Positions 1,624-59,291 of a stretch of 64,000 bases of DNA are shown here, piece by piece (within the stretch, counting starts at the first letter, position 1; each line of letters starts with the position of its first letter). The stretch spans positions 124,001-188,000 of the forward strand of contig NW_026926945.1 of assembly GCF_032062105.1 (NCBI RefSeq), read 5' to 3'. The translations under genes were made by a program, and so were the position numbers. The notes under the pieces were generated by a model. The model was not told the DNA's origin, did not search any database, and saw only the letters and a program-made list of their open reading frames with translations. The DNA is from Saccostrea cucullata. Taxonomy: Eukaryota.

Positions 1624-2319
1624 CTATTCACCAAAAAAATTAGAGAGTCTTTTTATGGCATTTTTGACTACTTCCAAAGTCTTATAAACCCTAATGCAAA
1701 ACCGTGCACAGATTCCAATACAAAACAGAAGTCCCTTGGCATTCATTGCCTGATGTGAGTACGAATTACCCACTAGTGTCCACGACACAAAACTGTCACA
1801 GTTATTGTGAAACACTGAGTACTGCCTCTCCCCTAGGCGTCTTTTTGCTCGTTTCACTGCCTCGGATTTTTCTTCCTCTGTCTTGGGGTAAGAGTCAGAT
1901 GTTATATGATAAACACCGGAACTAAAGTCTAAAGTTTCATCACTGCTCGTAACTTCTACCGATTCCTGAATAATCTCGGCAACTCCTTTTAAAAGAATTA
2001 TCATAGAAATCCTTTTTGGAGCATAGTGAACAATTGTCAATTTGTTTTCTGTTGCATCTGTCACCAAAAAGTGATGATTGTAGCTATAGTCAAATGTCCA
2101 CCACAGAATACGAAGAGAGCGAGGTCTGTGAACCCTGATATGGGAAGCTGGCCCTATCTCTCCACTTTGTACCAATTTTCGTATTTCAGATGCATCCTTT
2201 AAACGTTTTTCATGGCACTTAATACACTTAGACTTTTCCTCTGTAAATAATGTATGCTTCACAAACGTATAGAGAATTTTGTCCATGATACAACCAGCAT
2301 AACCAAACAACTTGTCCAT
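1624..2319 (-). CDS. LRAT/PLAAT (HRASLS, H-box/NC) family protein, paralogue 1, 231 aa
   Basis: Intact ORF with YNHHFLV (His1), TIVHY (His2), RAKRRLGERQYSVFHNNCDSFV (catalytic Cys) and a hydrophobic C-terminal helix; three paralogues in the window; TATA and Inr just upstream. Confidence 0.9.
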   Translation of the reverse strand: MDKLFGYAGCIMDKILYTFVKHTLFTEEKSKCIKCHEKRLKDASEIRKLVQSGEIGPASHIRVHRPRSLRILWWTFDYSYNHHFLVTDATENKLTIVHYAPKRISMIILLKGVAEIIQESVEVTSSDETLDFSSGVYHITSDSYPKTEEEKSEAVKRAKRRLGERQYSVFHNNCDSFVSWTLVGNSYSHQAMNAKGLLFCIGICARFCIRVYKTLEVVKNAIKRLSNFFGE

Positions 2320-2335
2320 CGCTTTAAACGATAAG

Positions 2336-2429
2336 AACTGATCAAGATGTAAACATGTCTTGTCTTTTATAGTTCTGTTCTTGATCTATTCTTAGAATTA
2401 GGTTTCCCCTTTCTCGTGGGAGGCGGAGC
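2336..2429 (-). promoter_or_regulatory. Core promoter of paralogue 1: Inr, TATA, GAS, kB-like site, GC box
   Basis: Minus-strand TCAGTT 2336-2341, CTATAAAAG 2364-2372, TTCTTAGAA 2389-2397, GGGGAAACCT 2400-2409; plus-strand GGGAGGCGGAGC 2418-2429; same order in paralogues 2 and 3. Confidence 0.75.
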
Positions 2430-4015
2430 TTAAGGATTTTAATTTGATCAATGAAACTTTCTATAATGTACAGCAAGTGAGAGAAAATCAGAAACCTTGA
2501 CTTCTTAAATATTTTTGAACATTTAATTTTCTGTTAAGACTTAATTGAATAAAAATCGATGAAATAAAACTCTTAAAGAGCACACAGTAATATAGATACA
2601 TGAAATTTATATATAGATTCATAATTATAATTTTGCTTAAATATTTGTTTTCAAATTAATTTTTTATTTCAATAATTTCTAATTATTAAAATATATTTGA
2701 AAGTTTTATTTTTCTACAATTTATAAAACTAGCATTCAATATGTATTTTTCTGTAACAAGTAATGAATTTGTTACTTTCAAAGATTTAGGAAAATAATTT
2801 TCCAAATATAACATGTATAACGCGATAAATTAAAGTGTTGAGCCATGTAAATTGATAAAACCACATACATTTAATTTTCAAATATCAATTTAATGCCTTG
2901 CAAGAATTAGGGTTTATCTTTTTTCTTGGTTTGACACACACACACAAAGATTCAATTAGCCTCCCTTTCACTTTGCTTCCGACGCCTATGTAAATTGATA
3001 TAACCACATACAATTAATTGTCATAAAATTAACTCAGCCTTGCAAGATAACTTTATCGATCTATTTCAATTGAAATAAATACAATTTGCTCTATTTTAAC
3101 GATACATTTGATGTGCATTATTGCATAATATAACGTAGGGTAATAAAACCTAGTATATTTGTTTCGGATATATTTTCCCAGGAATTCCAAAGACAACAAT
3201 ATATAAACATATAAATATATTATTACTAAATCTGACATATTTACAGATCGAGTCTTATCCTAATCCGCGGAGTAATTCGTCACTACGTATATATACAAAC
3301 CACAGTGGTTTTATCAGGCACTGTGTCAACTAGTATGATTAGTGTGTAGTGGTATGTGATTTTGATGTTAAACACATCGCGCGTTTGTTTGTATAATAAA
3401 ATTGTCTCATGATACTTGTGTCAATTTAAGTAATTGTATTGTGTGTAAATTTTTATTTTCATTGTAAACTCTAATTTAAAGGGAATTAATTGTATCATTA
3501 TAGGACACTCATATAGTAAATTGTGATGCAAAACGTGTTGAAGAAAAATAAATCTGAAGAATGATTTAAACTATAAATACTTAAAAAATAATTAGAGGAC
3601 TTATTCGCGTGTAAGTGATTGATTTCATTTACGTCATTTGACCAAAGACATTGAGTGTTGTATGTGTAAGCTATACACACTCCCCTCAAATTAAGTAATA
3701 GCTGTGAAATATTTTGAAAATACCGGTAATGATTTCAAAATCGTGCATGAGGATTTTTTCCCAGGAAACCTTTTTTTTATTATACCACACTTGATCATGT
3801 TGATGAAAATATGTATTTTACAAAAAAGAAAAAAAAATTTTACCACTCCAAAATGAGTAATTTTATGCATTACGAGGACATTTTTATGCAAGAAAGAAAA
3901 TTACAACTCAGCAGAATACACTTTAATGAAAAAATTAAGATCCTGGAGACTCTTTATCAAGCAACACATTTTTTTCACCCCTACATTGAGTCAACTCGAT
4001 ATATTCCAACTTTAA

Positions 4016-11859: not shown

Positions 11860-13330
11860 ATAAGGTAATTGTATCGACCATAGAACTTATTAAATGAACA
11901 CTGTAAAGGAGACTGGTGATATTCGTGATGCATAAATTTGTTTTTCAATAATCTACCTCGCTTTAGGAATTGCTAATACGTAGAGCATGCTCTTGCGCAT
12001 CAACTGACGCCTTTTCTAGGAAAGTATTCAAATATGAAGCAGATTTGTCAGACTCTGTATTATCTTTTATTTCAACTTCACTGGTATACATACGTATATT
12101 GTATCGACATAAGAATGGAAATAACTATTGTTAATTGACAATGCGTCATCGATATATCTACAAATGTCGAATTGAACTTCTTTTCAAGTATAGGATTTTG
12201 AACAATTTTTGTTTCATATCAGTACAAAAATAGGTATGCTAATAACGGAGCAAAATTGTTACACATGGGAATTACAATAGATTGTTGGAAGATCTGGTCT
12301 TCAAAAGTCACATAGATATTGTATTTCAGGAACTTAAGCATGGAAGGATATGGAGATAACGAACAGTATTCAATCTCTAAGGCCATAAAACAATAGAAAA
12401 TAGGAGCAGAGCAAACACTGACCCTCGAAACACGAGAGGTGGGATCAGGTGCCATGGAGGAGTGAGCATCCCCTGCTGACCGGTCACACCCGCCGTGTGC
12501 TCCTTGTCATGATCCAAAAATAACGAAAAAATCCGTCGTCAATTCAGTGTAAAAATAATGGACTAACAGTTAGTATGAAAAACGTCAGTCAGCATTTGAC
12601 TCAATGATAAAGTCTATTTGCTGACAAGGTCATTGCATCGACCATAGAACTTACGAAATGATGACTTTAAGCGAGTGTGCTGATAACTGTTTTGTCAATA
12701 TTTTACCTTGTTTTAGAAATTGTACATACGTAGAGCATGGTTTTACGGATCGAATCAACTGAGATACATAAACTCCGTATGCATGTGACGAAGGTATATT
12801 GCTTTCATAGAGCATGGTTGTTAGATTATCATTAACGCATTTTTCAAGTAAAATATCCAAATATGAAACAGATGTGTCAGACTCTGTGGTATCTTTTATC
12901 ACAAGCTCACCAGGATGTATCGTATCGACATAAGAATGGAAATTACCATTGTTAATTGAAAAAACGCCGTCTACATATCTAAATGTCGAGTTGAAGGCCA
13001 CAGCAAGTGTTTTCGTCTTTTCATGCTTAAGATTGTGCACAAATTTTGCTTCATATAAATATAAATACATAACTAGATCTGCTTATAACGGGGTGCAGTG
13101 GGTACCCATTGGAATTCCAATAGATCGTTGGAAGACCTGGTGTCCAAAAAAAAAAACATAGATATTGTCAATCAGAAACTCAAGCATCTTTTTGATGTCG
13201 ACTTTAGAGTACTTGTGTGCACAATCAGAATATGTTTTAACAAAATAATTTAGCAAAAGACAAATGGCAAAGTAAGTAAATTTACGAGTTCCATCTTTAT
13301 TGAAAAAGCAATCGTCCATTGTACTGTTTG
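11860..13330 (-). mobile_element. Two tandem Penelope-like (Naiad-type) RT fragments with 3' module
   Basis: ORFs 13083-13352, 12651-13070 and 12219-12455 give GIPMGT, FRYVDGV, YLDILL and SNIPSSHAYGVYVSQLIR; 3' module at about 12340-12560. Confidence 0.85.
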
Positions 13331-13919
13331 TTATAGAGTATGAAATGTCCACAGCTCAATGCTAAAATAAACCAGTCATGTACGCTTTCATTCCTTAACA
13401 CTTTGTAGTCAAAATGTTTAAATAAAAACTGGTTAATCGTTATTGCAGTAGTATATGATTATTGAATAACCATCATTCTGATCGTTCAAGTTCCAGATCC
13501 GTAACACATATCGTGCGCCTTTGTATTGTTGGACAAGACAAGTGAAAAAAAATTGGACAATTTTCTACCAGAAATGGTTTTCGATCATTATGCATGTAAA
13601 TTGTACATGCAAGCAAGTGTTCCCAATGCTTTAGTACAATTCAGACCAATTAAGAGAAATTAAGCGATGGCTCTCATAAAAAGTACAAACAATACATATC
13701 TGCGTACTGGGCACAGACTCGTTCCATTGAATAAATGTAACATTAAAGTGGAGTTATGTATGGGTCTTTGGTTCTTGACAATTTTACATTTATCCAACGT
13801 CACACAGTAACTGCAGTATGTAAGTGCGGAAATATACCGCACAAACATTACGTAAAATACGTGTGAACAACACTTTCAATCAGAACTTATTGGTCATAGC
13901 TTTACACGGAGTATATGAA

Positions 13920-16430: not shown

Positions 16431-17413
16431 TCTGTGTTTTGAAAATCTATAAACAATTTTGTATTGTTTTAATCCGACTTTGATATTGAATAGTTTGCGT
16501 AAAAAATAATTAAAAAATCCTTATTTCCTCCAATAGACACAAAATCAGAAAAAATATTGAAAGTAGGCCTTTAAGACCCCCCCCCCCCAAAAAAAAAAGA
16601 TAAGAAAAAATCAAATCAACTGGTAATTTAGGGGGCCTACTCAAAATGAAATTTAGGGTAGGGTAGAACAATATTTGAGATATATAAGATACAAAGGGAG
16701 CCAAAATGTGTTTATTATATTGCATGTAATACAAGTATCGTCGTTGGTTTTGATTCAAAGTTGTTTACATCATTTGACCCCCGGGGGCAAGCAAGCGGGA
16801 AACAACTGTGATTTACTTTTACAACTGCAAGCTAATTTTTACTTTATTTTCAATTAATTAGATTAATTGTTCTGCATCTTTATCTTGTGTAGGTCTCATT
16901 AAAAAGAGAAATTGTATCGCCACACACAGCTTGATGAGGTGCATGGAATGTCATGTTTGGACACTTGATTTGACAAGCAGTCTACTGCAGCTACTAAAGA
17001 AAAATATTATTTTATAAAATAGATTTGCAAGAATTTTTTTTTCGACAGAATCAGTCTTGCTGCTACATATGATATTATGAATTTAAAAAAACCACATTCT
17101 TTCAAATAATATATATTGAGGTAATGAACAGTATTCAAGTCATACAAATCAACAGCGGAGAAAACGCGGACCTCTAAATAAACCTTTACATTGCCTAGTA
17201 TTGACTATTTTAATAGATACAATCCTCCATAAAAATTAAAGATGAATAAACGTTGGTAATGTCTTGAAAATCTATAAACAATAAAAATCCGTGAAGAGGG
17301 CGTAATTACAGCATTATTGGGTACGTCATTACTGGTGACGTAAATGAAATTTAAAATACAATGTAATCTATTTAATGGGCGGAGATTAACCCCCTTCCCC
17401 GCAATCACGCATT

Positions 17414-17497
17414 TTAACGCATATACCATTTCCTTTTTCTAACGCAAATTAACGCATATACCATTTCCTTTTTCTAACGCAAATTAACGCATATACC
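17414..17497 (+). repeat. 35-bp tandem repeat, about 2.4 copies
   Basis: Unit ttaacgcatataccatttcctttttctaacgcaaa starts at 17414, 17449 and 17484. Confidence 0.9.
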
Positions 17498-18320: not shown

Positions 18321-20928
18321 TAGATCGGAGATTAGATTTTTCCAATGGTAAATCCAGCTAATATCCATAGATCATTTTCAAAGAGGAGAATCTTAAAAAA
18401 AGCATTTTTATTTTAAAAACATTTTAATATTCCCAACAGTTAAATTTAGTTATTTATTACCATACCCGTAATAAATTACTTTTTATATAACTCATATCAA
18501 ACAAGTTACAAAGATAAAAACTGGGTTCCAGTAAAAGTTCTTCTAAGCCTCTTTCCTTTCTTCTCACTAAGCTATTAACAGCAGTGAAGGAGGAAACTCT
18601 GAAGTATATATTAGATATTAAGTAGATCAAACGTTAATACTTACAAACATAGAGGAACAGTTCCAAAATTTCAAATCACAAAATTTTATCAAAAACTTAA
18701 ACATATAACGTCAAGCTCAAAATAGAATATTACTGAAAAAATGGACCAATAAAAAGGTTAGAAACTTGTAAAGTATAGTTATGGCCTGCAGCTTTTACCT
18801 TATATATTAAATCAGAAAAAAAAGCCTGTTAGACGTGCGTATGTTTTACAAAAATTTAAAATGTGTTTTTCCTCCAGATACTATGTCAAGCATACATATT
18901 GTCACCCTTTATTTTTCAAGACTCGGGCATTTTTCTTTTGAAGGATTAACTCAACACGCAAGCAAATGTAGGCGAAAAGTCTAATGAATAATTTTGATGT
19001 CACTTTTTGTTAAGCCTTTTTCACTCAAATTGAGACGACAAGGACATGTACACTTCAGGTACGGCCCCCGAGAAGCCAGGACTGCAATAAAAGATCTTAA
19101 TCTGTACGATTTCATTCGGAAAAACGGTATCCTAGTGTCCGTTTTACAAAAGAACTAACGGCCAAGACCACAATTTGATTAATTTTAAGTTTCTAATTTA
19201 CATTAACTGTAAACGGTTTTAGTCTTCCTGAAAGAAATGTAGTACGATAATTCCACATTGGCAATATCAAACACAATCATTAATTTTGCTTGATTTTACA
19301 AACAATTCAAGATTTAGGTTTCAATGGTAATTCTTCTGTAAAATGGACCCCAAGTCTCTTAGAAGGATTCGACAGCGTGAAGCAAAGATCAACTCTCAAG
19401 AGCAAACCCGCAAGCCACTACGCCACGGGGGTGACTTTAATAGATGAAAATTGAAAAGATAGTTCATATTCATATTAAAATATCGAAAGTCATAAAATGA
19501 ATATGAAAATTTATTACTATTACTATAAGACGGAAATTTAATATGTATTTGTTCCTGAAAGAGATTCATAAAAGTAAATTTAATTTTTAATTTTATATGA
19601 CAGAGAAATTATTCTAATAAATTGATCTTATTTAATCGTTCAATAAACTTGCAATAAAAAGATGCTAAAAAAGTTTTATTTTGAGATGATGTAAATGTTA
19701 AAAAAACCTACATAATAATCTTTAGCAAAATAAGATTAAATATTGATGAACCTTAAAATTTGCACCTTCATCAATTAAGAGCAATCCGTACTTTGGAGAC
19801 CAACAACTACTAATCAGAAGAACATGCGACACTTTGATTAATGATTTTTAAAAAAAAAAAATTAACACATATTGAGACACAAGACATGGGTTTAAGGCCT
19901 CTTCCAAACGAGCCGTCCCTGCGTCACACAGTGCATATATTGAGGGTCGGTCTTTCGCATGAGACCGTATTAAAGTACATCAAGAGTCTGGGTTTAATCT
20001 TGTAGTATAAACTGGAACCTTTAAATCTCTCTAAAAGATTTATTTATTCCTTTTAGACTCCAACTGACATCCCGTGATAGATGGAAATGAGTTTATTTAC
20101 TCTACAGAAGACTTGAATCAGGTGCTTGTATGTTACGTAACTTTAAAAGATTACGTAAATTAGAACGCATGTCAAGGAGAAACCTGCCTTTACCGTATTT
20201 CTTACACATTTCTAATTATTTTATATATCCGTTGTGTATTTTTAAGAATTATTTATATATTTACATTTATTGCAAAAAAAAAAAAAAAAAAAAACAAAAA
20301 AAAAAATTTAAAACTAAATTTTTTCATTGCATCTTTAATTTAATTGTTTTTTTTTTTTAATTGTTTACGAAGCTTTTTTCTCATGTTACTGGAAGATGAA
20401 ATTGAAGAAAATGAAATTCTTTGTAAACAGAGACTTCATCGGATATTTCTTTCCACGTAATCAATATTAATTGTAACTCTGATGCTAGCGAAAATGATTC
20501 TGTAAGAATTGTTGTTGTAATGGATAAGACCGTATGGCTGTGTTAAAACTTTTCTATCCCCTAATCATTTTCAGTTCAAGTATGCTTTTATATATATTCT
20601 GTTAATATAAAGGCAAGTTATGCATATAACTATATCTTCAAAATATTAGGTACATTTTTCATATTCTTATATACTCGGTACATGATTATGAGTTATATCA
20701 AATGTTAATAAATTCACTTTTTCATCATGAAAAGAATCGAAAATAGTTATTGGATAAAAGAAGGAAAAGATATCAAAACTACAAATATCACTCAACATTT
20801 ATTATGATACATATCAAATAAACATCAAATAAATTTCGGAATAATAAGCATAAGATAAAACAGATAAATATGAATATAACAATAAATTATATCACAGATA
20901 TGATTTCAGTATGAATAAATGCAGAGGA

Positions 20929-21588
20929 CTATTCACCAAAAGCATAGGAGAGTCGTTTTATAGCATTTTTGAATAATTCCAGCGTCCTGTAAATCTTTAT
21001 GCAAAACCGTGCACAGATTCCAATACAAAACAGAAGTCCCTTGGCATTCATTGCCTGATGTGAGTACGAATTACCCACTAGTGTCCACGAAACAAAACTG
21101 TCACAGTTATTGTGAAACACTGAGTATTGCCTCTCCCCTAGGCGTCTTTTTGCTCGTTTTACTGCTTCAGATTTTTCTTCCTCTGTCTTGGGGTAAGAGT
21201 CAGATGTTATATGATAAACACCGGAACTAAAATCTAAAGTTTCATCACTGTTCGTAACTTCTACCGATTCTTGAATGATCTCGGCAACTCCTTTTAAAAG
21301 AATTATCATGGAAATCCTTTTTGGAGCATAGTGAAGAATTGTCAGTTTGTTTTCTGTTGCATCTGTCACCAAGAAGTGGTGATTGTAGCTATAGTCAAAT
21401 GTCCACCACAGAATACAAAGAGAGCGAGGTCTGTGAATCCTGATATGGGAAGCTGGCCCTATCTCTCCACTTTGTACCAATTGTCGTATTTCAGATGCAT
21501 CCTTTAAACGTTTTTCAACGCACTTACAATCAGACTTTTTCTCTGTGAATAAAGTTTGCGTCACAAACATATTCAGCATTTTATCCAT
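20929..21588 (-). CDS. LRAT/PLAAT family protein, paralogue 2, 219 aa
   Basis: Intact ORF nearly identical to paralogue 1 over the catalytic core: YNHHFLV, TILHY, NNCDSFV. Confidence 0.9.
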   Translation of the reverse strand: MDKMLNMFVTQTLFTEKKSDCKCVEKRLKDASEIRQLVQSGEIGPASHIRIHRPRSLCILWWTFDYSYNHHFLVTDATENKLTILHYAPKRISMIILLKGVAEIIQESVEVTNSDETLDFSSGVYHITSDSYPKTEEEKSEAVKRAKRRLGERQYSVFHNNCDSFVSWTLVGNSYSHQAMNAKGLLFCIGICARFCIKIYRTLELFKNAIKRLSYAFGE

Positions 21589-21665
21589 AATTTAATCAGC
21601 ACAAAGCAACAACCTGTCACATTGCTGGAACTAAAAGAAATGGTCAACATGTAAACATGTCTTCG

Positions 21666-21725
21666 CTTTTATAGATCCCGATCTATTCTTAGAATGGTTT
21701 TCCCCTTTCTCATGGGAGGCGGGGC
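21666..21725 (-). promoter_or_regulatory. Core promoter of paralogue 2: TATA, GAS, kB, GC box
   Basis: CTATAAAAG 21666-21674, TTCTTAGAA 21686-21694, GGGGAAAACC 21696-21705 (minus), GGGAGGCGGGGC 21714-21725 (plus). Confidence 0.75.
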
Positions 21726-23331
21726 TTAATAATGAATTTGATCAATGTGGCATAAGATGTCCGTTGAAAGCAATAATACTGTATATACATGTATCAGATA
21801 AAATCGGGTTAACTTTAAAAAACACTGTGCATCACGAAGCAATTAAAGTAATTATTTATACTTTTATCTATAATAGAGCAATAATAGTTAAATTACGACC
21901 AGAAAGTGATCACGTGTAATTTTTTAAAAACATTATTTCTGTAGTAGACCAGATTTAATTGAGATTCGGGACAGTAATTTTCCACTGCGTGTAATACATC
22001 GTAGTGTGTGTTTGAGTCACAGTCTATGTAACGGGGGAATCCAAAAAAAAAACAACAAAAAAAACAATCTTCTAGAGCAGACATTGAATAAATTAACTGA
22101 ATGAGGCAGTTAAGATATGTTAAACAGATAGCAGGCTGAAAAGAGCTAGCGGCATTAATGAAATGTGAAGTAAATGGGATCAGAAGTATGATTATATACA
22201 TTTCAGAAGAAAATATACATCATTTACCATTTTCCTTTGTTGTGTCTGGTCTTTTCCGGTTTGTGTATTTATGTATGTATGCAATAGCTAATGTGTTTTA
22301 CATGTTGTGTATTAAAACTTTCCTCTGATAGCTCCATCTAACGTAGAGACTTAATGTTAAGCAAATCCTACTCTAATTAAAAAATAGTATAATATATGCT
22401 ATTATGAAATACTTATTATATACCATTATGCGTCATTATTTGAAGAGTACGAACTAACTGTTAACGACTAGAACTAACAATATTTAAACAAAATTACATC
22501 ATAAACGGATTGTCGACTTGTCAGGGATGAATTTCAAGTTTGAATTCCATTTGACAAAAAACAGAGTAATGTTTGTAAATGCTATGCAAATACCTCTATA
22601 TAAGAAACATTCAACATTATTTAATTTTTTTGAAAACAATGATAATTGACCAGGTTATATTCAGTTAATTTATTGCTAAAACATTTTTTTTATAAAATCA
22701 ATTTCAATGTACAAATATTGTAAGACTTCCCTGACCTTATTATTATAGTTCTTGCATTTGATCTTCACTTAAATTTCACCATATACTCTTAACTGAAATT
22801 ACGTTTAAAAAGCCTGACAGTTTCTTTAAAAACTAGAAGATTAATTGTGCACCTGTGAAGAATTCATTTCATTTACGTCACATGGACACAAACATTTGGC
22901 GAAATAAAGGTAAGGCTAGCAGACTGCTTTTCAACAGAAGTAAATAATTACAAAGTATGTCGGAAAAACCGTAAAGTGTCAACCACAAACAGATTTAGGT
23001 ATTACTTCTTATTGTAAAATACCATTTAATGCAAATTTGTATGCTGGTAATTAAGGTAATACTAGATCAAGGTGATAACTGAAAACGTCGTGAATAATTA
23101 TCAACCACATGTTAGAACGGATGAAACATCACTTGTAAAGGCAAAGCATCCCCTTTCACACCCGCCATGCTCCTTGTTATGATGATAAAAAGGAAAAATC
23201 GACAGTCAGGTCATAGTGTAATGCCTAGGTCACATTTCCCGGCCGGTAGCCGTAGACCGGTGGTAATCGGTGGTAATCCGTGGTGTTAACGATGCCTAAA
23301 CCTCGGTCCACATCGGCCTAGTAGTCCTTAA

Positions 23332-40997: not shown

Positions 40998-41630
40998 TTA
41001 CCTTAAACGAACACCGTTTTTAATAAACGTTAAGGTTCTATAAATTTTAATGCAACATTTTGCACAGATTCCAATACAATAAAGAAGTCCCTTGGCATTC
41101 ATTGCCTGGTGTGAGTACGAATTACCAACTAGTGTCCACGAGACAAAACTGTCACAGTTATTGTGAAACACTGAGTACTGCCTCTCCCCTAGTCGTCTTT
41201 TGGCCCTCTTTACAGCGTCAGTTTTCTGTTTGTGTGTCTCTGGGTAGCAGTCACACGTTACGAGGAACACCCCAGAACTAAAATCCAGGATCCCCTCCTT
41301 ATCCTCCGGTATCAGAGTCTCCTCAATAATCTCCGCTACCCCCCTTAACAGAATTATCATAGAAATCCTCTTCGGTGCATAGTGAATGATTGTTAATTGC
41401 GTTTCCTTTACCTCGGTCACCAAGAAGTGGTGATCGTAACTATAGTCAAATGTCCACCACAAAATACGAAGGGAGCGAGGTCTGCGAACTCTGATATGGG
41501 AAGCTGGCCCAATATCACCACACTGCACCATTCTCAACACTTCCGAAGCATCGTGTAACCTTTTTTCAACTTTTTGTGAGACAAGATCTGTTTTTCTGAA
41601 TACAGTCAAGTAATCGTATGCAGTATGCAT
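40998..41630 (-). CDS. LRAT/PLAAT family protein, paralogue 3, 210 aa
   Basis: Intact ORF: YDHHFLV, TIIHY, NNCDSFV and hydrophobic tail. Confidence 0.88.
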   Translation of the reverse strand: MHTAYDYLTVFRKTDLVSQKVEKRLHDASEVLRMVQCGDIGPASHIRVRRPRSLRILWWTFDYSYDHHFLVTEVKETQLTIIHYAPKRISMIILLRGVAEIIEETLIPEDKEGILDFSSGVFLVTCDCYPETHKQKTDAVKRAKRRLGERQYSVFHNNCDSFVSWTLVGNSYSHQAMNAKGLLYCIGICAKCCIKIYRTLTFIKNGVRLR

Positions 41631-41721: not shown

Positions 41722-41789
41722 CTTTTATAGTTCTTACTTTATTTTTAGAATGAACTGGATTTTCCCTATTGCTTCATGGAAGGCGGGGC
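41722..41789 (-). promoter_or_regulatory. Core promoter of paralogue 3: TATA, degenerate GAS, kB, GC box
   Basis: CTATAAAAG 41722-41730, TTTTTAGAA 41742-41750, GGGAAAATCC 41757-41766 (minus), GGAAGGCGGGGC 41778-41789 (plus). Confidence 0.7.
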
Positions 41790-43884
41790 TGAATGGCCTT
41801 CATCTTCGTTTGCGTTTAAAAGACAAGGATTAATAAAAAAAAAAAAAACGGAGGAAAAACAAAACAAAACTCAAGAATAAAAAGGGAAAGAAAATAGATG
41901 AGTCTTAAAGCTATAAGTTACTTATTTTAATTAGGCCTTTATGACTTACATATCCTCCAGTATGTACATTGTAACTATCGCTTTTATCTACTTTAATGTT
42001 TGTATTGTAGAAAGAGACAAAAAGAAATGTTACATGAAAGCCAACAACAAAATTTTAAAACCCATTATCGAAGTTTTATTGACTAAAATAATCTAGGTTC
42101 ATATAGGATATACTCAGCAATATAAAAACGAAGCTGATTCTTTTACGATTTACAAAAATGTAATCTATTTTGATTGTTAACCAATCAGATCAGCTTATTC
42201 TTTTCTCTTAACGTTTTTGAGATACATAGACTGAAACAGTTTTGTAATGAGTAATTAAAAAGTAAAAAAATCTTTTAAAGAGTATTAAAGGTGAATTTAA
42301 AGCAACTATAAAATATATTAAAAGATATAAAAATAAATTGAACAATAAATAACAAAGGGATAAACAAATAAGTGAATAAATAAATAAATCAAACTTCTTA
42401 TTGACATCACATTCGCAACTTATGAAAACCTAATATTTATAGAGAGCGAATTATTTAATGTCGTAATTTATTGTTTAAACCCCACTTTATTTATAAATAC
42501 TTCTAAAGCCTATTGAACTATTTTGGTCAATAAGTGTTACAAATGTATAAAAAAAAGTTGGTGTAGAAGTAGTGTTGTTTATACTGTTTATACTGTTCTC
42601 TATCTCCACATATTTCATTCCAAAAAATCATTCATTTTTTCAAATAACAAAAGGTTGAAATTTAATATCTTATCTTCTTAACCCTATTAAAATATATTGC
42701 TATTTTTACAGGTAAAAATTCAAGGTGCAACGTACATGTCCACGTTTCATCTGCTGTCTTCCGGAGAAGAGATATCGAATTTCACAGTTGGTAGTTTACA
42801 GGCATTCATAATGAGATACAAGTCGGATTGATCGCTAAGGGCATGTTGTGTATACACACAGGGCAGCGATAATAATGACTGGGGACTTCCTGGTCTTGTG
42901 AAGTACTTGTAAGATTTAAACACTTCTCAGATTGCTATCGATTTTAATTTCTAACAGAACAAAGAATACATCTTAACAAATCATTCACCAGAGTGTGTTT
43001 TCCTCATATTAAAAGCGAGATAATAACACATAACTGTATTGTGTTCTGGTTTGAATTATTAAAGTTTGATATAGTTATAAGAGGCTTCTAAGCAATAATA
43101 TAAGTATCTAGAAAAATGAGCTAAGACATGGACTTTGATGCTGGTTATTGTAATGATCGTAAAAACCCAAGTGCTACACATAGTACTTACTGCAAATTAT
43201 TTCTAAAACTTTTAATTCAATACAAAATTAAAAAATGTGGGATATCTTGTCAAAGTTTCGAAGTTTATCTTTTCAAACTTGCAATGTCAATAAAAACAAA
43301 ATTCTTGTACGATACAATCATTTCATTGTCCAGTGTGATTGGACAATTTCAAATTTTAAAACCAACACAGGAGAGTTTATACGTATATAGAAATGTAAAC
43401 ACTGTATTTCAATGTTATGTGAAATAACGTAAAATTAATCGGGTATACGAAGACAAGTTAGTCTTTTCCAGAGTTATGGGGAATCACCTTCCATTCAAAC
43501 TAGTTGGAGGCGGGGGCTGACATCATATGCCTTAATTGTTGGATTTTATGAATGAAAAAAGGGCTTGGTAGGTATTCGTCCATTAAACGTTCACGAATCT
43601 TTACGAATTCATTCCACTGAATGATTTTCTTCACTTGTGTGCCTTCAAGTCAAAATCTAAATATATACCTTATAATGAAAAGGAAAATCTTCAACACTCA
43701 AAAAGCTGTTTTAAAATATATATCTTTTTAGAATAAAGAAATAAAAACACAAGAATGCAAAGATGGATTTTCTTTTTTTAATAGCATTAAAATGCCATTT
43801 TTCTTTTATATTTTTTAACCATTCTAAATTCTATCATTAACCTGACACTGAAGAAAAAAGTTAATCTGTTTTAGTTTTTACACA

Positions 43885-46017: not shown

Positions 46018-46019
<2 letters not shown>

Positions 46020-49369: not shown

Positions 49370-51154
49370 AAATGGACTTATAATGGTGAAAATATAGAAA
49401 TAGTGGACCAGTTTGTCTATTTAGGCATTGTGTTTAACTATAACTGTAAATTCCTTAATGCCCAAAAACAATTAGCGGCACAAGGTCGCAAGGCTATGTT
49501 CGCTCTTAAATCAACAATGAAGCAGCTTTATTTAAATCATTGTACTTTGTTTTCTATTTTTGATACCTATGTGTGTAGTATCTTAAACTATGGATGTGAA
49601 GTTTGGGGATCCCACAAAGGCCAAGACATTGAAAAGGTTCATCTTGAGTTTATACGATATGTACTCGGTGTCCGTAAAACTACAAACACGTCCATGTTGT
49701 ACTTTGAGACAGGACGTCTACCCATGTACCTTATTCGTATTTATCGAATGTTTAAATTCTGGTTTAAATTATTACAGTCTGAAAATTGTATATTAAGAGC
49801 TGCTTATGATTGGTCTTATTGTAGTTGTGAAAATGATAAGCAAAATTATCAAAGTTGGGCAAAGTTTATCAAGGAGCAATTACATTGTTTGGGCCTTGGG
49901 TATACAGTAAAACACGTTTAGTACGAACACGGATATAGCGAATTCACGGATATAACGAAGTGTTTCTGGTTCCCCGGCAAAATTCTTTACAAATCTTTGT
50001 AAAATTTTACGGTTATAACGAATTCTGATATAACGAATTTACGGATATAGCGAACTAATTTTGAGTCCCGTTGAGGTTAAATATAATGAATTTTATATCT
50101 TCTATAACGAACTTTCAAAGATTTCAAAATTTGAGTAATTAAACTGACTTTATTTTCTCTCAGCATTTGTATATAAAATTCAAATCATATTAAAAACCTT
50201 AGTTATCGAAGATATGTTTTGTGATATTTGCTTCCCTAACATATTTGATAGTAACACTTGAAGGAAAACATGCATATTGTGAATTCGCTATATATGGTGA
50301 CACGAATTCGTTATACGGATATAACGAATTACGGATATAGCGAATTAGATTAACAGGTCCCAAGGACTTCGCTATAACCGTGTTTTACTGTATGTGGAAC
50401 GACCAAAGGAATCTGAATAGTCGGATCTGTCTGCCAATCATTCGTCAAAGACTTAATGATCACTTTATACAGACCCTATATAGCAAAATGCAAATAGAAT
50501 CAAAATGTTATATTTATAAACATTTAATTGACAATTTTTGCTTGCAATATTATTTAGAAAAATCGATACCAAAGGTGTACAAAAAATGTATTTCTAAAAT
50601 GAGGTTGTCTTCGCATAATCTGTTTATTGAAACTGGTAGGCATAAAAATATAACAAGAGACAAAAAATTCTGTAAAATATGTACTACAGAAATTGAAGAT
50701 GAATACCATTTTTTACTTGTTTGCCCAATTTATTCAACATTGCGTACAAAGTTTTTGAAAAAATATTATTGGTATAGGCCATCTATGTACAAATTAATAC
50801 AGTTGCTAAGTGTGAATAATGTAAAAGAATTATGTAATTTAGGGAAGTTTATCTATAAAGCCCTCGCGCTTAGAAATGATTTAATAATGTAATGGTGTGT
50901 CATTTGCTGATTTGTTACTCCTATATTATTATATGATTGATATGATTTTATCTGCTTTATTACATGTCATTCTCCATATGAACTGTAAAGACTGTTAAAA
51001 TGAGTTTATATGTATATATGTGCATGTTTCATAAGGGTTTACAAGACTGACCAGCCATTATTAATTTCTTTATTTCATTTGTTTATATTGTATAAATGCT
51101 ATAAGACGTATGTCTTTTGCAATAAAGAATTGAATTGAATTGAATTGAATTGAA
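49370..51154 (+). mobile_element. 5'-truncated non-LTR retrotransposon (RTE-X-like) ORF2 C-terminus, 3' UTR and (GAATT)n tail
   Basis: FVYLGIVF...ILNYGCEVWG...ETGRLP, then RLSSHNLFIETGR...CKIC...EDEYHFLLVC zinc knuckle; AATAAA plus (GAATT)5 at 51121-51154. Confidence 0.85.
49905..50390. mobile_element. Tc1/mariner-pogo type MITE inserted in the LINE
   Basis: TA|CAGTAAAACACG ... CGTGTTTTACTG|TA; internal (ggat)ataacgaa repeats; excision rejoins the two ORFs in frame. Confidence 0.92.
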
Positions 51155-51629: not shown

Positions 51630-53400
51630 TATGAAGGATATAGAGATAAAGAACAGTATTCAATATCAAAGTCCATAAAACAATACAAAACAGGAGCAGA
51701 GCAAACACAGACCTCCAGAACATCAGAGGTGGTATCAGGTGTCATAGAGAAGTGAGCAACTCCTGCCGACCGGTCACACCCGCTGTGTGCTCCTTGTCAT
51801 GATCGGGATATAACGGAAAACCGTCGTCATTTCAGTGTATAAACAATGGACTAACGGTTAGCATGAAAAACGTCATTTGACTCAATGATATATTGTATTT
51901 GCTGACAAGGTCATTGTATCGACCATAGAACTTGCGAAATTATGACTTTAAACGAGACTTCTGATATTCTTGTTTCATTAACTTGTTTGTCAATAATTTA
52001 CCTCGTTTTAGAAATTGTTCATACGTAGAGCATGTTCTTGCGTATTGAATCAACTGAGAGATATAAACGCCGTATCGAATACATTGAGAGAAACGAAACC
52101 CGTATGCTGATGATAAGGATATATTCCTACCTAAGTATGAGTTGTCGACAATTGAACAAACTGAAGTTATAAAGTTTATGACAAAGCTTAGTTATAACGA
52201 TACAATTAGCTTTTGTCTGATAAATCCTATCTGAAAATAAAACACATTTCCAGATAACCGTAACAAATAGTTTGTATGCTGATATTTTACTTGAAAAAGA
52301 CATTAATAATAAATGTAATGATTTTAACTTTACAATCGTCAACTTCCCTTACTTATGCAGCAATATTCCTCCATCACCTGTATGCGGGTTTATATCTCTT
52401 AGTTGATTCGATACACAAGAAAACGTTTACGTATTCACCATTTCTAGAAAAAGGTAAATTATTGACAAACAAATTGATGAAACAAAATTACCAACAGTCT
52501 CGTTTAAAATCACCATATCTCGCTCTGTGAACGGGAGGTCGTGAGCTCGAATCTCAGCCGCAACTGACCTAAGTAAAAAATGGGTAGCAACTGTTCCTTC
52601 GCCCTGCGCTCGGCACTTAAAGTGAAAGTTACATATCCTTCGGATGCGACCTTAAAAACGGAGAATTTGTATCGCAACAGACGTTGGCACGATAATGATC
52701 CCTCACTGCTTAAGGGTGCTGAGTGCCGAGTAAAGGTAAAACATTAAGCCCTTAACAAAATAATACCATAGTTAACTATAGTTTACTAGCCTATAGTTTA
52801 CAATCAAACTTTTCAAAGTGTTCACTTTAGTGAATCAAGTTTTCAAAGTTATCATTATAGTAGATCATAGTTTTTACCATAGTTAAGCAGTTTTCATGGT
52901 GAACACTATGGTAAAGCAAAGTTTTTATAGTGAACACTATGGTAAAGCAAAGGTTTCATAGTGTCAAAGTTATCACTATATAGTTAACATTTTTTTTTGT
53001 TAGGGTTCTCCGGTATATGGTGACGTCTCTTCATGAGTATGAAATTCTCGTATGGAACGTAAAACAAAATACAATAAATCAATTGAAATCATAATTTCTT
53101 ACTAAAGTTCTCTGGCCGAGGTGTTGACCTTATCAGCAAATACAATTTATTGTTGAGTCAATTGCTTACAGTCATCTTTCATATTAATTGTTAGGCTATT
53201 ATTTACAAATGTACATTGAATTGTCAAAAGATTTTCCAGTTATTTCCCGATCATGAATAGGAGCAGGTATGATGCTTACTCCTCCATGGCACCTTATCCC
53301 ACCGCTGATGTTTTGGAGGTCCATGTCCGTTCTGCTCCTAGTTTCTATTTTTATTGAACCTTTAAGCTTGAATGCCGTTCATCTTATCATATTTGTCATC
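51630..53400. mobile_element. Inverted Penelope-like pair (51630-52080 minus; 52270-53400 plus, interrupted)
   Basis: RT C-terminus (DFNFTIVNFPYLCSNIPPSP) and 3' modules in opposite orientations. Confidence 0.8.
52515..53085 (+). mobile_element. Deu/Nin-type SINE interrupted by a CCC..GGG MITE (52749-53005)
   Basis: B-box-like gagctcgaatctc and core ccttcggatgcgacc; the SINE resumes at ttctccggtatatggtgacgtctc; MITE TIR CCCTTAACAAAA / TTTTGTTAGGG. Confidence 0.75.
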
Positions 53401-56085: not shown

Positions 56086-57169
56086 TTCGTTATTTTCATA
56101 TGTTTCATTCAAGTGATGAAATATGGAATGTTACCTGTGTTTTTTTACAATGTAGATGGATAATGATAGCTTATTGTACTCCAAGTGATGAAAATGTATG
56201 AGTTTTTAATTCAAAATAAGACTTTAGTACACGTGTATTATTTTTCACATTTTCAATTTAGTATTTGCGTATAAGATTACTTTGAAAAAAATGTCTATAA
56301 TGGTAACAATGGAATTTTATGTCAACAATAAAGAGTAGACAGTACAATACAGTTTCTTAAATTGAACTTTATCAGAAGGAAAGATTTATCAAATATATGA
56401 TAGGTCCTCTTCTAAAAAAATATATTGAAAATATGTTTTTGTTAAGTACAGCGATTTCATGAAATGGGCTTTCCACTTCTGACACTAAGAACTGTGTTTT
56501 AAAACTTCCTCTAATTAGCTCAAAACACTGCTACATTTCGTCGAAAAGTACTCACTTTACCTTGAAGTAGCGCTGAACTGTTTTTGACAGTATTTAACAT
56601 ATAATTATTTTGTTAGATATCACTAAACATTTCTGAATTTTAATTTGTTACAGCCTCGGGCTGAAAATTATTTTTTCTTTTTTCCTAAGAGTTGCTTATT
56701 TGATTTGATTAGAAGAAGAGCAAGATGAAAAAACAGTTATCGTTATATTATCAGCGAAACATTTTCTTCAATATTTTAAAAATTTTTACAATATATTTTA
56801 TGTCGGATTTAAAAATTATTGATGATACATGTTGTATTTTTATAAACGTATTTTTCAGGTGACAACCTATCAGAAAACAGAATGTTTTAACACACGTTTT
56901 GGGGTGTGCTATGTAAAAAGAAAATATATTAATATATTTGTTTTTCTGTTTATCAAAGTAAATTTATGTATATAGAGAAACAGTAAAATCAATTTCATGT
57001 AAATTCATAAAAAAAATTTGTGTGAACACGTCATTTAAATGTATTACTTTAAAATCAAGTTAGATAATATTAATTTGATTTGGAATTATATGCTTGTTTT
57101 CAGTTCATGACAAAAATTTGAATTATAAAGACTGAGTTTGATATCTTTTCTTATACACTTGTAAAACCC

Positions 57170-57980
57170 TGGATGAAGGATATGGAGACAACGAACAACA
57201 TTCAGTATCAAAGGCCATAAAACGATACAAAATAGGAACAGAGCAAACACGGACTTTCAAAACATCAGAGGTGCCATGGAGGAGTGAGCTTCCCCTGCCG
57301 ACCGGTCACACCCACAGGCAGTCTGCTCCTTGTCATGATCAGGAAATAATGTAGAAATTTGTCGTCAATTCGTTGTATAAATAATGGACTAACAATTAGT
57401 ATAAAAAAGGTTAGTCAACATTTGACTCAATGATAAATTGTATTTGCAGACGAGGTTATTGAATCGACGATAGAACTTACGAAATGATGACTATACGAGA
57501 CTACTGATATTCTTGCTTCATCAACTTGTTTGTCAATAATTTACCTCGTTTCGGATTTTTTCATACGTAGAGCATGCTTTTGAGTTTCGAATCAACTGAG
57601 ATGTATAAACATCGTATGCAGGTGATGAAGGTAAATTGCTGCATAAGTAAGGGAAGTTATGGATATGAATATTATGAACCTTAACATTATATAGGGCCTA
57701 TATGTGAACTTCATATATACCTATATTGAAACATATGGAGAAAACGAACAGTATTCAAAATCAAAAGTCCATAAAAAATACAAAATAAGATTAGAGCAAA
57801 CACAGACCTCTAAAACACTGAAGGTGGGTTTAGGTGCCATGGAGGAGTGAGAATCCCCCGTGTGCTCCTTGTCATGATCGAGAAATAACGGAAAGACAGC
57901 CAATTCAGTGTATAAAAAATGGATTAATAATCAGTATGAAAAACGTAAGTCAGCATTTGACTCAATAACAAACTGTATTC
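57170..57980 (-). mobile_element. Two tandem Penelope-like 3' fragments
   Basis: Modules at about 57175-57370 and 57725-57910 with RT C-terminal sequence between them. Confidence 0.8.
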
Positions 57981-58640
57981 ATATGAGATCTTAGATAAAA
58001 GAATTGAAATTATAAGATTCGGGGGGTAATTTTGATTTTAGCGTTCATTGTTAGGCTCACTCCCCCATGGCACCTGATCCCACCTCTGATTGTTTGCTCT
58101 ACTACTATTTTAATGGACTTTTGTGCTCAAAAGTGTTTGTTATATCTGCATAAGTATTCAAATAAACACACTTTATATACAAAAAAGAAATCAACTTCAA
58201 TATATCTCCATTATCACAAAATATTAAAATGTTCTGTAGAAAAATTAAAAAAAATTATAAATGCGCATATACATAATGTGTTTACATGCACATTTCACTT
58301 GGCGGTGCACACACAAAAGGACAGTGTATTACAAAGTTAAAACAGAACTGTTTTAAAAATGGGCCAAGGTCGATGAAAGATCTAACATTATTTAAAAAGC
58401 TAAAAAAAAATTGTATGACATTCCTGCGTGTCAGTCATCCATGTGAATTTGACCAACGGTCTCTCGTTACATTTTATAACAAAACCGAGTAACCTCAAAA
58501 GGGAATTCATAAATCTATTTATAGTATTTAAAAACATCAACTATTTAAAAACGTCCTGTTGTCGATTTAAACAGACACAAAACAAAGACTTTGCACGGAG
58601 AGAACGGAATTAAGTTTGGAAAGGTTTTACAGCTTTATCG

Positions 58641-59291
58641 ATGCTGATAAAGACTTACTCGAGGAAATCTATCTTTTCTTGGGACTACAAGGTTGAGAAA
58701 TGCCCCTGTAGGAGAATTTGGAATGCGGAGGACATGAAAAAATTGGTCCAGATTGGACTGGTAGGGCCAGCATCTCATATAAGGGTTCACAGACCCCGGA
58801 CGCTACATTTTTTGTGGTGGAAATTTGACTACAGCTACAACCACCACTACATGGTGGTGTCTGCTACCACGGAATCACTGACAATCATACACTACGCTCC
58901 CAAGAAGATTTCTAGAATTCTTTTATTTCAGGGTGTGGCTGAAATCAAAGAGGAGACGGTGAAAATTGAAAACAACACCGACACGTTGGATTTTAAATCT
59001 GGAGTTTATCTTATCATGAAGGACAAGTACCCCAAAACCCTCAGACAAAGGAGTTACTGTGTAAAGAAGGCCAGGCGTAGACTGGGGGAGAGGCAATACT
59101 CTGTGTTCCACAATAACTGTGACAGTTTCGTGTCGTGGACTCTCCGGGGCAAGTCAATCTCTATCCAGGCCATGGAGGCCACGGGACTTCTATTGTTTAT
59201 CGGCCTACTGGCCAGGACTTCTATCAGGATCTATCGGCTTTTTAAGTCTGTTATAGACGGGGTAAATGACTTTATAGATTCTTATGGATAA
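58641..59291 (+). CDS. LRAT/PLAAT family protein, paralogue 4 (most divergent), 216 aa
   Basis: Intact ORF: GPASHIRVHRPR, YNHHYMV, TIIHY, LGERQYSVFHNNCDSFV and tail GLLLFIGLLAR; AATAAA at 59495. Confidence 0.9.
   Translation: MLIKTYSRKSIFSWDYKVEKCPCRRIWNAEDMKKLVQIGLVGPASHIRVHRPRTLHFLWWKFDYSYNHHYMVVSATTESLTIIHYAPKKISRILLFQGVAEIKEETVKIENNTDTLDFKSGVYLIMKDKYPKTLRQRSYCVKKARRRLGERQYSVFHNNCDSFVSWTLRGKSISIQAMEATGLLLFIGLLARTSIRIYRLFKSVIDGVNDFIDSYG

What the first reader, a model, noticed from the sequence alone, without database searches (positions are those of the whole stretch)
1624..59291. Four-gene LRAT/PLAAT-like cluster with a shared NF-kB + STAT promoter module: candidate immune-inducible lipid-remodelling system
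Seen: four intact single-ORF paralogues sit in otherwise decayed repeat DNA. Directly upstream of copies 1-3 is the same ordered module of 60-70 bp (GC box, kB, TTCTTAGAA GAS, TATAAAAG), while the spacers and flanks have diverged. Copy 1 has a TCAGTT initiator about 32 nt after the TATA. Known: this fold (His-His-Cys, permuted NlpC/P60) gives phospholipase A/acyltransferase activity. Vertebrate PLAAT4 (RARRES3) is interferon/retinoid-inducible, and PLAAT3 (PLA2G16) acts at damaged membranes and in picornavirus entry. Inference: this is a lineage-specific invertebrate family of pathogen-induced membrane-modifying enzymes driven by Rel and JAK/STAT signalling.
Basis: partly seen in the sequence, partly recalled or inferred. 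Interest (0 to 1): 0.82.

Follow-up and report, generated by a model that had tools for sequence, protein, structure and literature searches.

The report
Oyster PLAAT-like gene cluster, shared promoter
Four intact, intronless genes for PLAAT/LRAT-type lipid-modifying enzymes sit in an oyster genome, each behind a small promoter conserved across oyster genera that holds a probable NF-kB-type site but no conserved STAT site; whether infection switches them on is untested.

Summary
Four intact single-exon ORFs lie at 1624-2319(-), 20929-21588(-), 40998-41630(-) and 58641-59291(+). All pass Pfam LRAT (PF04970). Copies 1-3 share an ordered upstream block: GC box, GGGRAAA(A)YCC, TATAAAAG. An AlphaFold model (pLDDT 88.5) matches PLAAT2/3/4 at Z 10.4-10.6. 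His70, His86 and Cys162 align with the PLAAT3 catalytic triad.

The family is one oyster-only clade under purifying selection (omega 0.07-0.25). Its nearest relatives are other bivalve LRAT-domain proteins.

The promoter block is 87-90% identical to Saccostrea echinata where four-fold sites are 65% identical, and it is unique in the 1.17 Gb genome. GC box, Rel-type site, TATA and the TCAGTT initiator recur in Ostrea and Crassostrea. The Rel-type site is flipped in C. virginica, and the whole GC/Rel unit is inverted in a Magallana-like copy. Copy 4 and its orthologues carry their own Rel-type site 14-26 bp before a TATA-like box.

The GAS (STAT) palindrome exists only in copies 1, 2 and the S. 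echinata orthologue, so the STAT claim is not supported. Transcription of the ORF is seen in RNA libraries. Induction by pathogens could not be tested, and no literature on this family was found.

Verdict: a new member of a known enzyme kind. The enzyme and promoter claims are supported. NF-kB control is plausible but inferred.

The parts
1624..2319 (-). Copy 1 (c1), 231-aa LRAT/PLAAT-like ORF. The start homologous to the other copies is Met12, ATG at 2286-2284.
   Evidence: (PF04970, 41.2 bits against a cut-off of 24.3).
2336..2430 (-). c1 promoter block: GC box 2418-2430, Rel-like GGGGAAACC 2401-2409, TTCTAAGAA 2389-2397, CTATAAAAG 2364-2372, initiator TCAGTT 2336-2341.
20929..21588 (-). Copy 2 (c2), 219-aa ORF. 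It is 91% identical to c1 and 85-86% identical to S. echinata LOC133196730. Contigs from RNA libraries lie on it.
21637..21726 (-). c2 promoter block: GC box 21714-21726, Rel-like GGGGAAAACC 21696-21705, TTCTAAGAA 21686-21694, CTATAAAAG 21666-21674, initiator-like CCATTTC 21637-21643.
   Evidence: (87-90% identical to the S. echinata orthologue).
40998..41630 (-). Copy 3 (c3), 210-aa ORF. It is an older paralogue, with dS about 1.2 against c2.
41722..41790 (-). c3 promoter block: GC box 41778-41790, Rel-like GGGAAAATCC 41757-41766, degenerate TTCTAAAAA 41742-41750, CTATAAAAG 41722-41730.
58641..59291 (+). Copy 4 (c4), 216-aa ORF. It belongs to a separate old clade with orthologues in S. echinata (92% aa identity) and O. 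edulis (69%), and with relatives in a cluster that holds a C. virginica protein.
58501..58524 (+). c4 promoter core: Rel-like GGGAATTCAT 58501-58510 and TATA-like CTATTTATAG 58515-58524.

Best explanation
This is an oyster-specific (Ostreidae) tandem cluster of four intronless genes for PLAAT/LRAT-fold enzymes.

Shown:
- Each protein has the permuted NlpC/P60 core with His70, His86 and Cys162 (c2 numbering), which align with the PLAAT3 triad His23/His35/Cys113.
- A long C-terminal helix follows the core and has a short hydrophobic stretch.
- Each gene has its own compact promoter held under purifying selection. In copies 1-3 it reads GC box, then a Rel-homology-type site GGGRAAA(A)YCC 30-37 bp before TATAAAAG, then an initiator about 30 nt after the TATA. 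Copy 4 has a Rel-type site 14 bp before a TATA-like box.

Inferred:
- The enzyme sits on the cytosolic face of a membrane.
- It takes an acyl chain from a glycerophospholipid onto Cys162 as a thioester.
- It then passes the chain to water (PLA1/2 activity) or to another lipid (acyltransferase activity).
- The conserved GC/Rel-type unit is a real binding unit for a Rel/NF-kB-family factor together with an Sp/KLF-type factor. That would make the genes inducible by Rel signalling, probably in immunity or stress.

The STAT element is not part of the conserved design.
For: Enzyme:
- PF04970 scores above its cut-off for all four copies.
- A profile of 71 relatives hits HRASLS2 at 7e-9 and PLAAT3 at 2.4e-7. 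The alignment pairs YnHH with YRHW, IIHY with VVHL, and NNCD/E with ENCEHF.
- The AlphaFold model has pLDDT 88.5. It matches PLAAT4 at Z 10.6 (106 of 118 residues) and PLAAT3 and HRASLS2 at Z 10.4. Chains outside the PLAAT/LRAT/2A group score Z 5.4 or less, apart from the Euglena subunit 8iuf_E7 (Z 12.1, rmsd 8.3).
- H70, H71, H86 and C162 are invariant in 18 oyster sequences.
- omega is 0.07-0.25.

Promoter:
- The c2 block at -150..-51 is 87-90% identical to S. echinata. Four-fold sites are 65% identical, and the sequence just upstream (-200 to -350) aligns at only 26-46%.
- The block occurs nowhere else in the 1.17 Gb genome.
- GC box, Rel-type site, TATA and TCAGTT/TCATTT recur in two Ostrea promoters and in C. 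virginica, where synonymous sites are saturated.
- The Rel-type 10-mer is exactly reverse-complemented in C. virginica. The 30-bp GC/Rel unit is inverted in the Magallana-like locus L035, with 23 of 30 bases identical after reverse complementing.
- A GGGRAW core lies 14-37 bp before the TATA in 11 of 12 promoters. Background density is 1.5 per kb.
- Most sites keep GGG...CC over 9-10 bp while the inner bases vary.

Transcription:
- Contigs from two runs recorded as RNA-Seq and two further runs cover the ORF only. Their 5' loose ends reach about 21613-21619. None crosses the TATA at 21666-21674.
Against: - There are no expression data under immune challenge and no literature on this family.
- Most Rel-type sites miss the strict vertebrate consensus GGGRNNYYCC by 1-2 bases. 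c4 itself has the weakest site.
- Another factor that reads GGGAA/GGAAA, such as NFAT or an ETS-like factor, could bind instead.
- The laid contigs are 90-99% alike, so they come from relatives or alleles and give no true transcription start.
- One 908-nt Magallana-like contig of unknown library type (L034) starts 22 nt upstream of its TATA. If it is RNA, it argues against the predicted start in that copy.
- The C-terminal hydrophobic stretch is borderline for a transmembrane helix (Kyte-Doolittle 1.1-1.8).
- The genes show no sign of arms-race evolution.
Confidence: 0.5

Rival explanations
1. The enzymes are the same, but the genes are ordinary tissue-specific or constitutive lipid-metabolism genes. 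The conserved GC box, TATA and initiator form a plain strong core promoter. The G-rich/A-rich element binds a non-Rel factor, so there is no link to immunity.
For: Sites deviate from the strict kB consensus. omega of 0.07-0.25 is typical of housekeeping constraint. Transcripts appear in four unselected runs from three studies, with no sign that a challenge was needed. No immune-transcriptome paper mentions the family.
Against: The GGG...CC frame over 9-10 bp is kept through base changes, orientation flips and an inversion of the unit. It also appears independently in the copy-4 clade, which lacks the GC box. That pattern fits a dimeric Rel-homology site better than a generic G/A-rich element.
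Confidence: 0.35
2. One reading: the promoter is driven jointly by Rel and by JAK/STAT through the TTCTAAGAA GAS element.
For: A perfect TTCN3GAA lies 20-25 bp before the TATA in c1, c2 and the S. echinata orthologue. c3 has a different TTCCATGAA at 41773-41781.
Against: The element is not conserved. c3 reads TTCTAAAAA there, the two Ostrea promoters read ATTTAAAAA and ATTCAAAAA, and C. virginica reads TTCAGAAAT. The Magallana-like copies and the copy-4 clade have none. The motif is no more frequent in the window than chance predicts. By my own rough estimate, two independent occurrences in about 1.1 kb of promoter is near the chance expectation of about 0.4.
Confidence: 0.08
3. The ORFs are of viral or mobile-element origin (picornavirus-like 2A H-box/NC proteins share the fold) and were scattered by transposition rather than being host genes.
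For: The genes are intronless and compact. The c1/c2 shared unit is only about 900 bp. They sit among repeats. Aichivirus 2A matches the model at Z 7.8.
Against: The same genes are present in S. echinata on one contig with matching relative orientation. Orthologues occur in Ostrea, and related copies in Crassostrea and Magallana. Selection is purifying. The nearest relatives are bivalve LRAT-domain proteins. There are only four copies in 1.17 Gb, and the promoter block is unique to the cluster.
Confidence: 0.03

Closest known systems
Vertebrate PLAAT1-5 (HRASLS family: PLA2G16/PLAAT3, HRASLS2, RARRES3/PLAAT4)
   Same: Same fold (Z 10.4-10.6). Same His-His-Cys triad and NCEHF-type motif, here NNCD(S/C)F. 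Similar small size, with a catalytic domain followed by a C-terminal hydrophobic helix.
   Different: Only 21-24% identical, and not orthologous. There is an extra N-terminal segment of about 35 aa with conserved Cys residues. The C-terminal helix is long (residues 185-216), amphipathic and only weakly hydrophobic, not a terminal transmembrane anchor. The genes are intronless, in a tandem cluster, with a TATA/Rel-type promoter rather than IRF/retinoid control.
Lecithin:retinol acyltransferase (LRAT) and the Pfam family PF04970
   Same: All four copies pass the Pfam gathering score. The HRASLS3/LRAT chimera matches at Z 6.8.
   Different: No evidence for a retinoid substrate. The structural and profile matches to the HRASLS3/LRAT chimera (Z 6.8; E 1.9e-5) are weaker than those to PLAAT2/3/4.
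Bivalve LRAT-domain proteins (Mytilus galloprovincialis VDI05588.1 and VDI39156.1, M. edulis, Sinanodonta woodiana)
   Same: They are the nearest non-oyster relatives, at E 1e-20 to 1e-29, and share the catalytic core.
   Different: They differ in length and architecture (251-634 aa). A long stem branch of 1.48 separates them from the oyster clade.
kB-driven immune effector promoters, such as insect antimicrobial-peptide genes with a kB site close to the TATA box (from general knowledge)
   Same: A compact promoter with a Rel-type site within about 40 bp of a TATA box. The 10-mer GGATTTTCCC found in C. virginica, whose reverse complement is in c3, lies inside a mouse iNOS NF-kB EMSA probe (PMC4619452).
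   Different: Neither binding nor induction has been shown here. Most sites deviate from the strict consensus.

Membership tests
LRAT/PLAAT family (PF04970, permuted NlpC/P60) | Match to the family profile above the curated cut-off | tested here: met
   33.1-41.2 bits against a cut-off of 24.3 for all four copies. The profile of relatives hits HRASLS2 at 7e-9 and PLAAT3 at 2.4e-7.
LRAT/PLAAT family (PF04970, permuted NlpC/P60) | Catalytic Cys in an NCEHF-type motif at the start of a helix | tested here: met
   NNCD(S/C)(F/L/Y) aligns with ENCEHF. Cys162 is invariant in the oyster sequences and present in at least 90% of 71 relatives. Helix 162-171 in the model.
LRAT/PLAAT family (PF04970, permuted NlpC/P60) | Two His residues equivalent to PLAAT3 His23 and His35 | tested here: met
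   YNHH aligns with YRHW (His70) and IIHY with VVHL (His86). Both are invariant in the oyster sequences.
LRAT/PLAAT family (PF04970, permuted NlpC/P60) | PLAAT-type three-dimensional fold | tested here: met
   Model pLDDT 88.5. 7zot Z 10.6, 2kyt, 7zom and 4dpz Z 10.4; chains outside the PLAAT/LRAT/2A group score at most 5.4, apart from 8iuf_E7 (Z 12.1, rmsd 8.3).
LRAT/PLAAT family (PF04970, permuted NlpC/P60) | C-terminal transmembrane or hydrophobic anchor | tested here: inconclusive
   Long helix 185-216. The best 19-residue hydropathy is 1.1-1.8, with a conserved basic residue in the middle in most copies.
LRAT/PLAAT family (PF04970, permuted NlpC/P60) | Phospholipase A1/2 or acyltransferase activity | not testable with these tools
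   Needs an enzyme assay.
Orthologue of a vertebrate PLAAT (PLAAT3 or PLAAT4) | Closest relatives are vertebrate PLAATs, or one-to-one orthology | tested here: not met
   All oyster copies form one 50% cluster. The next full-length hits are bivalve proteins. A single-sequence search finds no PDB PLAAT.
Rel/NF-kB target promoter | Site matching the kB consensus GGGRNNYYCC near the core promoter | tested here: inconclusive
   c3 has 1 mismatch; c1, c2 and c4 have 2. Orthologues: O. edulis c4-type 0 mismatches; S. echinata c4-type, C. virginica and L019 1 mismatch.
Rel/NF-kB target promoter | Site conserved in orthologous promoters | tested here: met
   A Rel-type site is present 14-51 bp before the TATA in 12 of 13 promoters from at least four genera. 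This includes flipped and inverted instances.
Rel/NF-kB target promoter | Rel binding and Rel- or pathogen-dependent induction | not testable with these tools
   The reads tools gave only contigs from relatives. No literature was found.
JAK/STAT (GAS) target promoter | TTCN3GAA conserved in orthologous promoters | tested here: not met
   Present only in c1, c2 and S. echinata LOC133196730. It is degenerate or absent elsewhere.

The most novel reading that the evidence does not exclude
Oysters evolved their own family of Rel/NF-kB-induced PLAAT-like enzymes that attack or remodel membranes of intracellular pathogens, viral replication compartments or damaged organelles. This would be an invertebrate counterpart of interferon-induced PLAAT4 that arose independently. 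Its small GC-box/kB unit works in either orientation and has been kept since the oyster genera diverged.
Probability: 0.25. Interest if true: 0.7.

Novelty: new member of a known kind. Interest (0 to 1): 0.42.

Why it matters
If the Rel-type site is functional, these four genes are compact candidates for studying how oysters deploy lipid-modifying effectors in immunity or stress. Oysters suffer mass mortalities from OsHV-1 and Vibrio. The roughly 100-bp promoter could also serve as a small inducible promoter for bivalve reporter work. The flipped and inverted GC/Rel unit is a clean natural example of a regulatory module that survives changes of orientation. If the genes are not inducible, this is simply an unstudied, well-conserved, oyster-only branch of the PLAAT/LRAT enzyme family.

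Tried and rejected
- A single-sequence phmmer search against PDB found nothing relevant. The 18-sequence profile gave only E 0.92 to HRASLS2.
- The first AlphaFold model, from the shallow alignment, was poor (pLDDT 67.7; the catalytic helix was below 50). Foldseek on it gave no meaningful match. The wide VIA search put PLAAT4 only at rank 7, Z 5.9. Both were superseded by the model from the 71-sequence alignment.
- The strict kB pattern found no promoter site.
- The sequencing-run search gave only small word shares (0.18 at most). All runs were Logan contigs from relatives or alleles, so start sites, strand and expression level could not be read.
- Logan and ENA contigs carrying orthologues (L004, L005, L019-L033) are colinear with genomic DNA or carry long upstream flanks. 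They are not transcripts and say nothing about start sites.
- L034 has an unknown library type.
- Six literature searches found no paper on this family in oysters or other bivalves. A seventh search, on the kB-like 10-mers, turned up mammalian NF-kB papers, one of which (PMC4619452) carries the 10-mer in an NF-kB EMSA probe.
- I read the motifs by eye for IRF/ISRE or MEF2 alternatives at the conserved elements. They fit only some copies, so I dropped them.
- The viral or mobile-element origin was rejected; see the rival explanations.
- Two look-ups of the scan's earlier findings returned nothing.
Full report
WHAT IS THERE. The window is AT-rich (31-35% GC) and is contig C9082:124001-188000 of a 1.17 Gb assembly. 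It belongs to an oyster: the closest named proteins are from Saccostrea echinata (85-86% aa identity), then Magallana gigas, Crassostrea virginica and Ostrea edulis.

Only seven ORFs reach 120 aa. They are 54-91% identical to each other. Ten of the other 18 ORFs that reach 85 aa were tested and none has a Pfam domain. A quarter of the window repeats within the window. The whole genome holds only these four close copies. Other LRAT-domain hits in the genome are about 30% identical.

THE PROTEINS. All four copies pass Pfam PF04970 (LRAT) at 33-41 bits against a cut-off of 24.3.
- A single sequence finds no solved structure.
- A profile of 71 relatives hits HRASLS2 (7e-9), PLAAT3/PLA2G16 (2.4e-7), the HRASLS3/LRAT chimera and PLAAT4.
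- In that alignment YNHH pairs with YRHW, so His70 matches PLAAT3 His23. IIHY pairs with VVHL, so His86 matches His35. NNCDSF pairs with ENCEHF, so Cys162 matches Cys113.
- These residues are invariant in 18 oyster sequences.

The first AlphaFold model, from 18 sequences, was poor. With 71 sequences it reached pLDDT 88.5 and pTM 0.80. Foldseek then ranked PLAAT3, HRASLS2 and PLAAT4 at ranks 1 and 3-5. The structural second look gave these scores:
- PLAAT4: Z 10.6, 106 of 118 residues aligned, rmsd 3.0.
- PLAAT3 and HRASLS2: Z 10.4.
- Aichivirus 2A: Z 7.8.
- Chains outside the PLAAT/LRAT/2A group: Z 5.4 or less, apart from the Euglena subunit 8iuf_E7 (Z 12.1, rmsd 8.3; see the notes in passing).

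After the catalytic core comes a long helix (185-216). Its hydrophobic stretch (GLLxCIGICA) is short and is interrupted by a basic residue in most copies. The 19-residue hydropathy of 1.1-1.8 is borderline for a membrane span. I therefore infer membrane association, not a proven tail anchor. By homology the mechanism is an acyl-Cys162 thioester formed from a glycerophospholipid and resolved by water or by a lipid acceptor. This is inferred, not shown.

EVOLUTION. In the exhaustive search all oyster copies collapse into one 50%-identity cluster (E 1e-105). The next full-length hits, at E 1e-28 or weaker, are LRAT-domain proteins of Mytilus and Sinanodonta with other lengths.

The tree shows a monophyletic oyster clade on a long stem. 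Inside it is a well-supported c4 clade, holding Saccostrea, Ostrea and a sequence that clusters with a C. virginica protein. The remaining sequences are unresolved and hold c1-c3. c1 and c2 group with S. echinata LOC133196730.

Differences at four-fold sites are as follows:
- c1 against c2: 0.12.
- c2 or c4 against their S. echinata orthologues: 0.35.
- c3 against c1 or c2: 0.45.
- Against Crassostrea: saturated.

omega is 0.07-0.25 throughout. That is purifying selection, with no arms-race signal at whole-gene level. In S. echinata the c2-type and c4-type genes lie about 65 kb apart on one contig, with the same relative orientation as here.

THE PROMOTERS. c1/c2 DNA similarity runs only from about -134 to +65 around the ORF. 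c3 and c4 match c1/c2 only inside the ORF by BLAST. Even so, a block just upstream aligns among c1, c2 and c3. Its order is GC box (AGCYCCGCCTYCC), a Rel-homology-type site (GGGGAAACC, GGGGAAAACC or GGGAAAATCC), an AT-rich element, CTATAAAAG, and in c1 TCAGTT 31 nt later.

Against the S. echinata orthologue, the c2 block at -150..-51 is 87-90% identical. That is as high as the best-conserved coding sequence. Four-fold sites are 65% identical, and the sequence just upstream (-200 to -350) aligns at only 26-46%. The block occurs nowhere else in the 1.17 Gb genome, so it is not a repeat-borne promoter.

At greater distance the same parts recur in two Ostrea-type promoters (L021, L022) and in C. 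virginica (L002), where synonymous sites are saturated. Those parts are the GC box, GGGAAAAACC or the exact reverse complement of the c3 10-mer, TATA, and TCAGTT or TCATTT at +30.

In a Magallana-like locus (L035) the whole 30-bp GC/Rel unit is inverted relative to the TATA, with 23 of 30 bases identical after reverse complementing. A unit that survives a flip is what one expects of a binding-site module, not of passively inherited sequence.

The c4 clade has a different conserved promoter without a GC box. It again carries a Rel-type site 14-26 bp before a TATA-like box:
- c4: GGGAATTCAT.
- S. echinata: GGGAATTCCT.
- O. edulis: GGGAATCTCC, a perfect match to GGGRNNYYCC.
- L019 and L027: GGGAAAGTCC.

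A GGGRAW core lies 14-37 bp before the TATA in 11 of 12 promoters. Background density is 1.5 per kb, which predicts about 0.05 per 30-bp window. Most sites keep GGG...CC over 9-10 bp while the inner bases vary. That fits a dimeric Rel-homology site better than a simple GGAAA element.

The GGATTTTCCC 10-mer also lies inside a published mouse iNOS NF-kB EMSA probe (PMC4619452). This is only a weak pointer.

WHAT FAILS. The GAS palindrome TTCTAAGAA is present only in c1, c2 and S. echinata LOC133196730, so it is one inherited instance. At the same place c3 reads TTCTAAAAA, the two Ostrea promoters read ATTTAAAAA and ATTCAAAAA, and C. virginica reads TTCAGAAAT. The Magallana-like copies and the c4 clade have none. 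In the window the motif is at chance frequency: 2 found, 1.84 expected. c3 has an unrelated TTCCATGAA overlapping its GC box.

None of the window's ten strict kB matches lies in a promoter. The cluster's own sites miss that consensus by 1-2 bases.

TRANSCRIPTION. The sequencing-run search returned only small shares. I laid four runs on 18800-23800. Two are recorded as metatranscriptomic RNA-Seq and the other two are guessed to be RNA. All four place contigs on the c2 ORF (20884-21574, 90-99% alike) and on a repeat at 23142-23640. None lies on the unique flanks.

Two contigs continue 47 and 96 nt beyond 21572 and 21517 as unaligned 5' ends. They reach about 21613-21619, just short of the predicted start near 21641. 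None crosses the TATA at 21666-74.

This shows that a c2-type gene is transcribed. It is compatible with the predicted start. It comes from relatives or alleles and from contigs, so it maps no start site and says nothing about induction.

One 908-nt Magallana-like contig of unknown library type (L034) begins 22 nt upstream of its TATA. If it is RNA, it would argue against the predicted start in that copy.

LITERATURE. Searches for oyster, Crassostrea or bivalve terms together with LRAT, PLAAT, HRASLS or RARRES3, and for the orthologues' accession numbers, found nothing on this family. Public records call the orthologues 'uncharacterized' or 'LRAT domain-containing'.

VERDICT. The enzyme assignment is solid. 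The promoter is truly conserved, and its Rel-type site passes the cross-species test. The STAT element does not pass it. Immune induction remains an inference.

I put about 0.5 on a functional Rel-family site that makes the genes inducible. I put about 0.35 on an ordinary, non-immune promoter for the same enzymes. This is a new, oyster-only member of a known enzyme kind, with an unusually clear small promoter.

Noticed in passing
window 2284-2319 and 21617-21622: The first ATG of c1 (2319) is homologous to a minimal upstream ORF (ATG TGA) in the 5' leader of c2 (21622-21617) and of the S. echinata orthologue. In c1 it has come into frame and adds 11 residues, so the conserved start is probably Met12.
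   Followed up: partly
L035:1900-1990 (Magallana-like contig from SRR327449): The 30-bp GC-box/Rel-type unit is inverted relative to the TATA box compared with the Saccostrea copies. 23 of 30 bases are identical after reverse complementing. L020 has the same inverted layout with a degenerate Rel-type site.
   Followed up: partly
window 23142-23640: This short stretch is covered at high depth (up to about 260) by many contigs in all four runs laid, at 90-95% identity. It is probably an abundant, possibly transcribed, repeat family.
   Followed up: no
window 12651-13352 (-) and 49403-50892 (+): These ORFs of 89-172 aa look by eye like decayed reverse-transcriptase remnants (a YVDG-type motif). 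None has a Pfam match at E 0.01 or better.
   Followed up: partly
model mfc2c60e8ee19 against PDB 8iuf_E7: Subunit NDUEG7 of a Euglena respiratory supercomplex is the top structural match by Z (12.1, 157 residues, rmsd 8.3) and a weak profile hit (E 0.0034). It seems to be an LRAT-like domain plus a long helix built into a membrane complex.
   Followed up: no
L034:1-908 (SRR32622304): This transcript-sized contig of a Magallana-like paralogue starts 22 nt upstream of the TATA box and ends just after an AATAAA. The library type is unknown. If it is RNA, the start site of that copy lies upstream of the TATA.
   Followed up: partly
window 17407-17497 and 52889-52963: Two short tandem repeats (periods 35 and 31, about 2.5 copies each) lie in the intergenic DNA.
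   Followed up: no
window 40670-40997: c3 has no canonical AATAAA or ATTAAA within 328 nt after its stop. c1, c2 and c4 have one at +181, +126 and +66/+120/+204.
   Followed up: no
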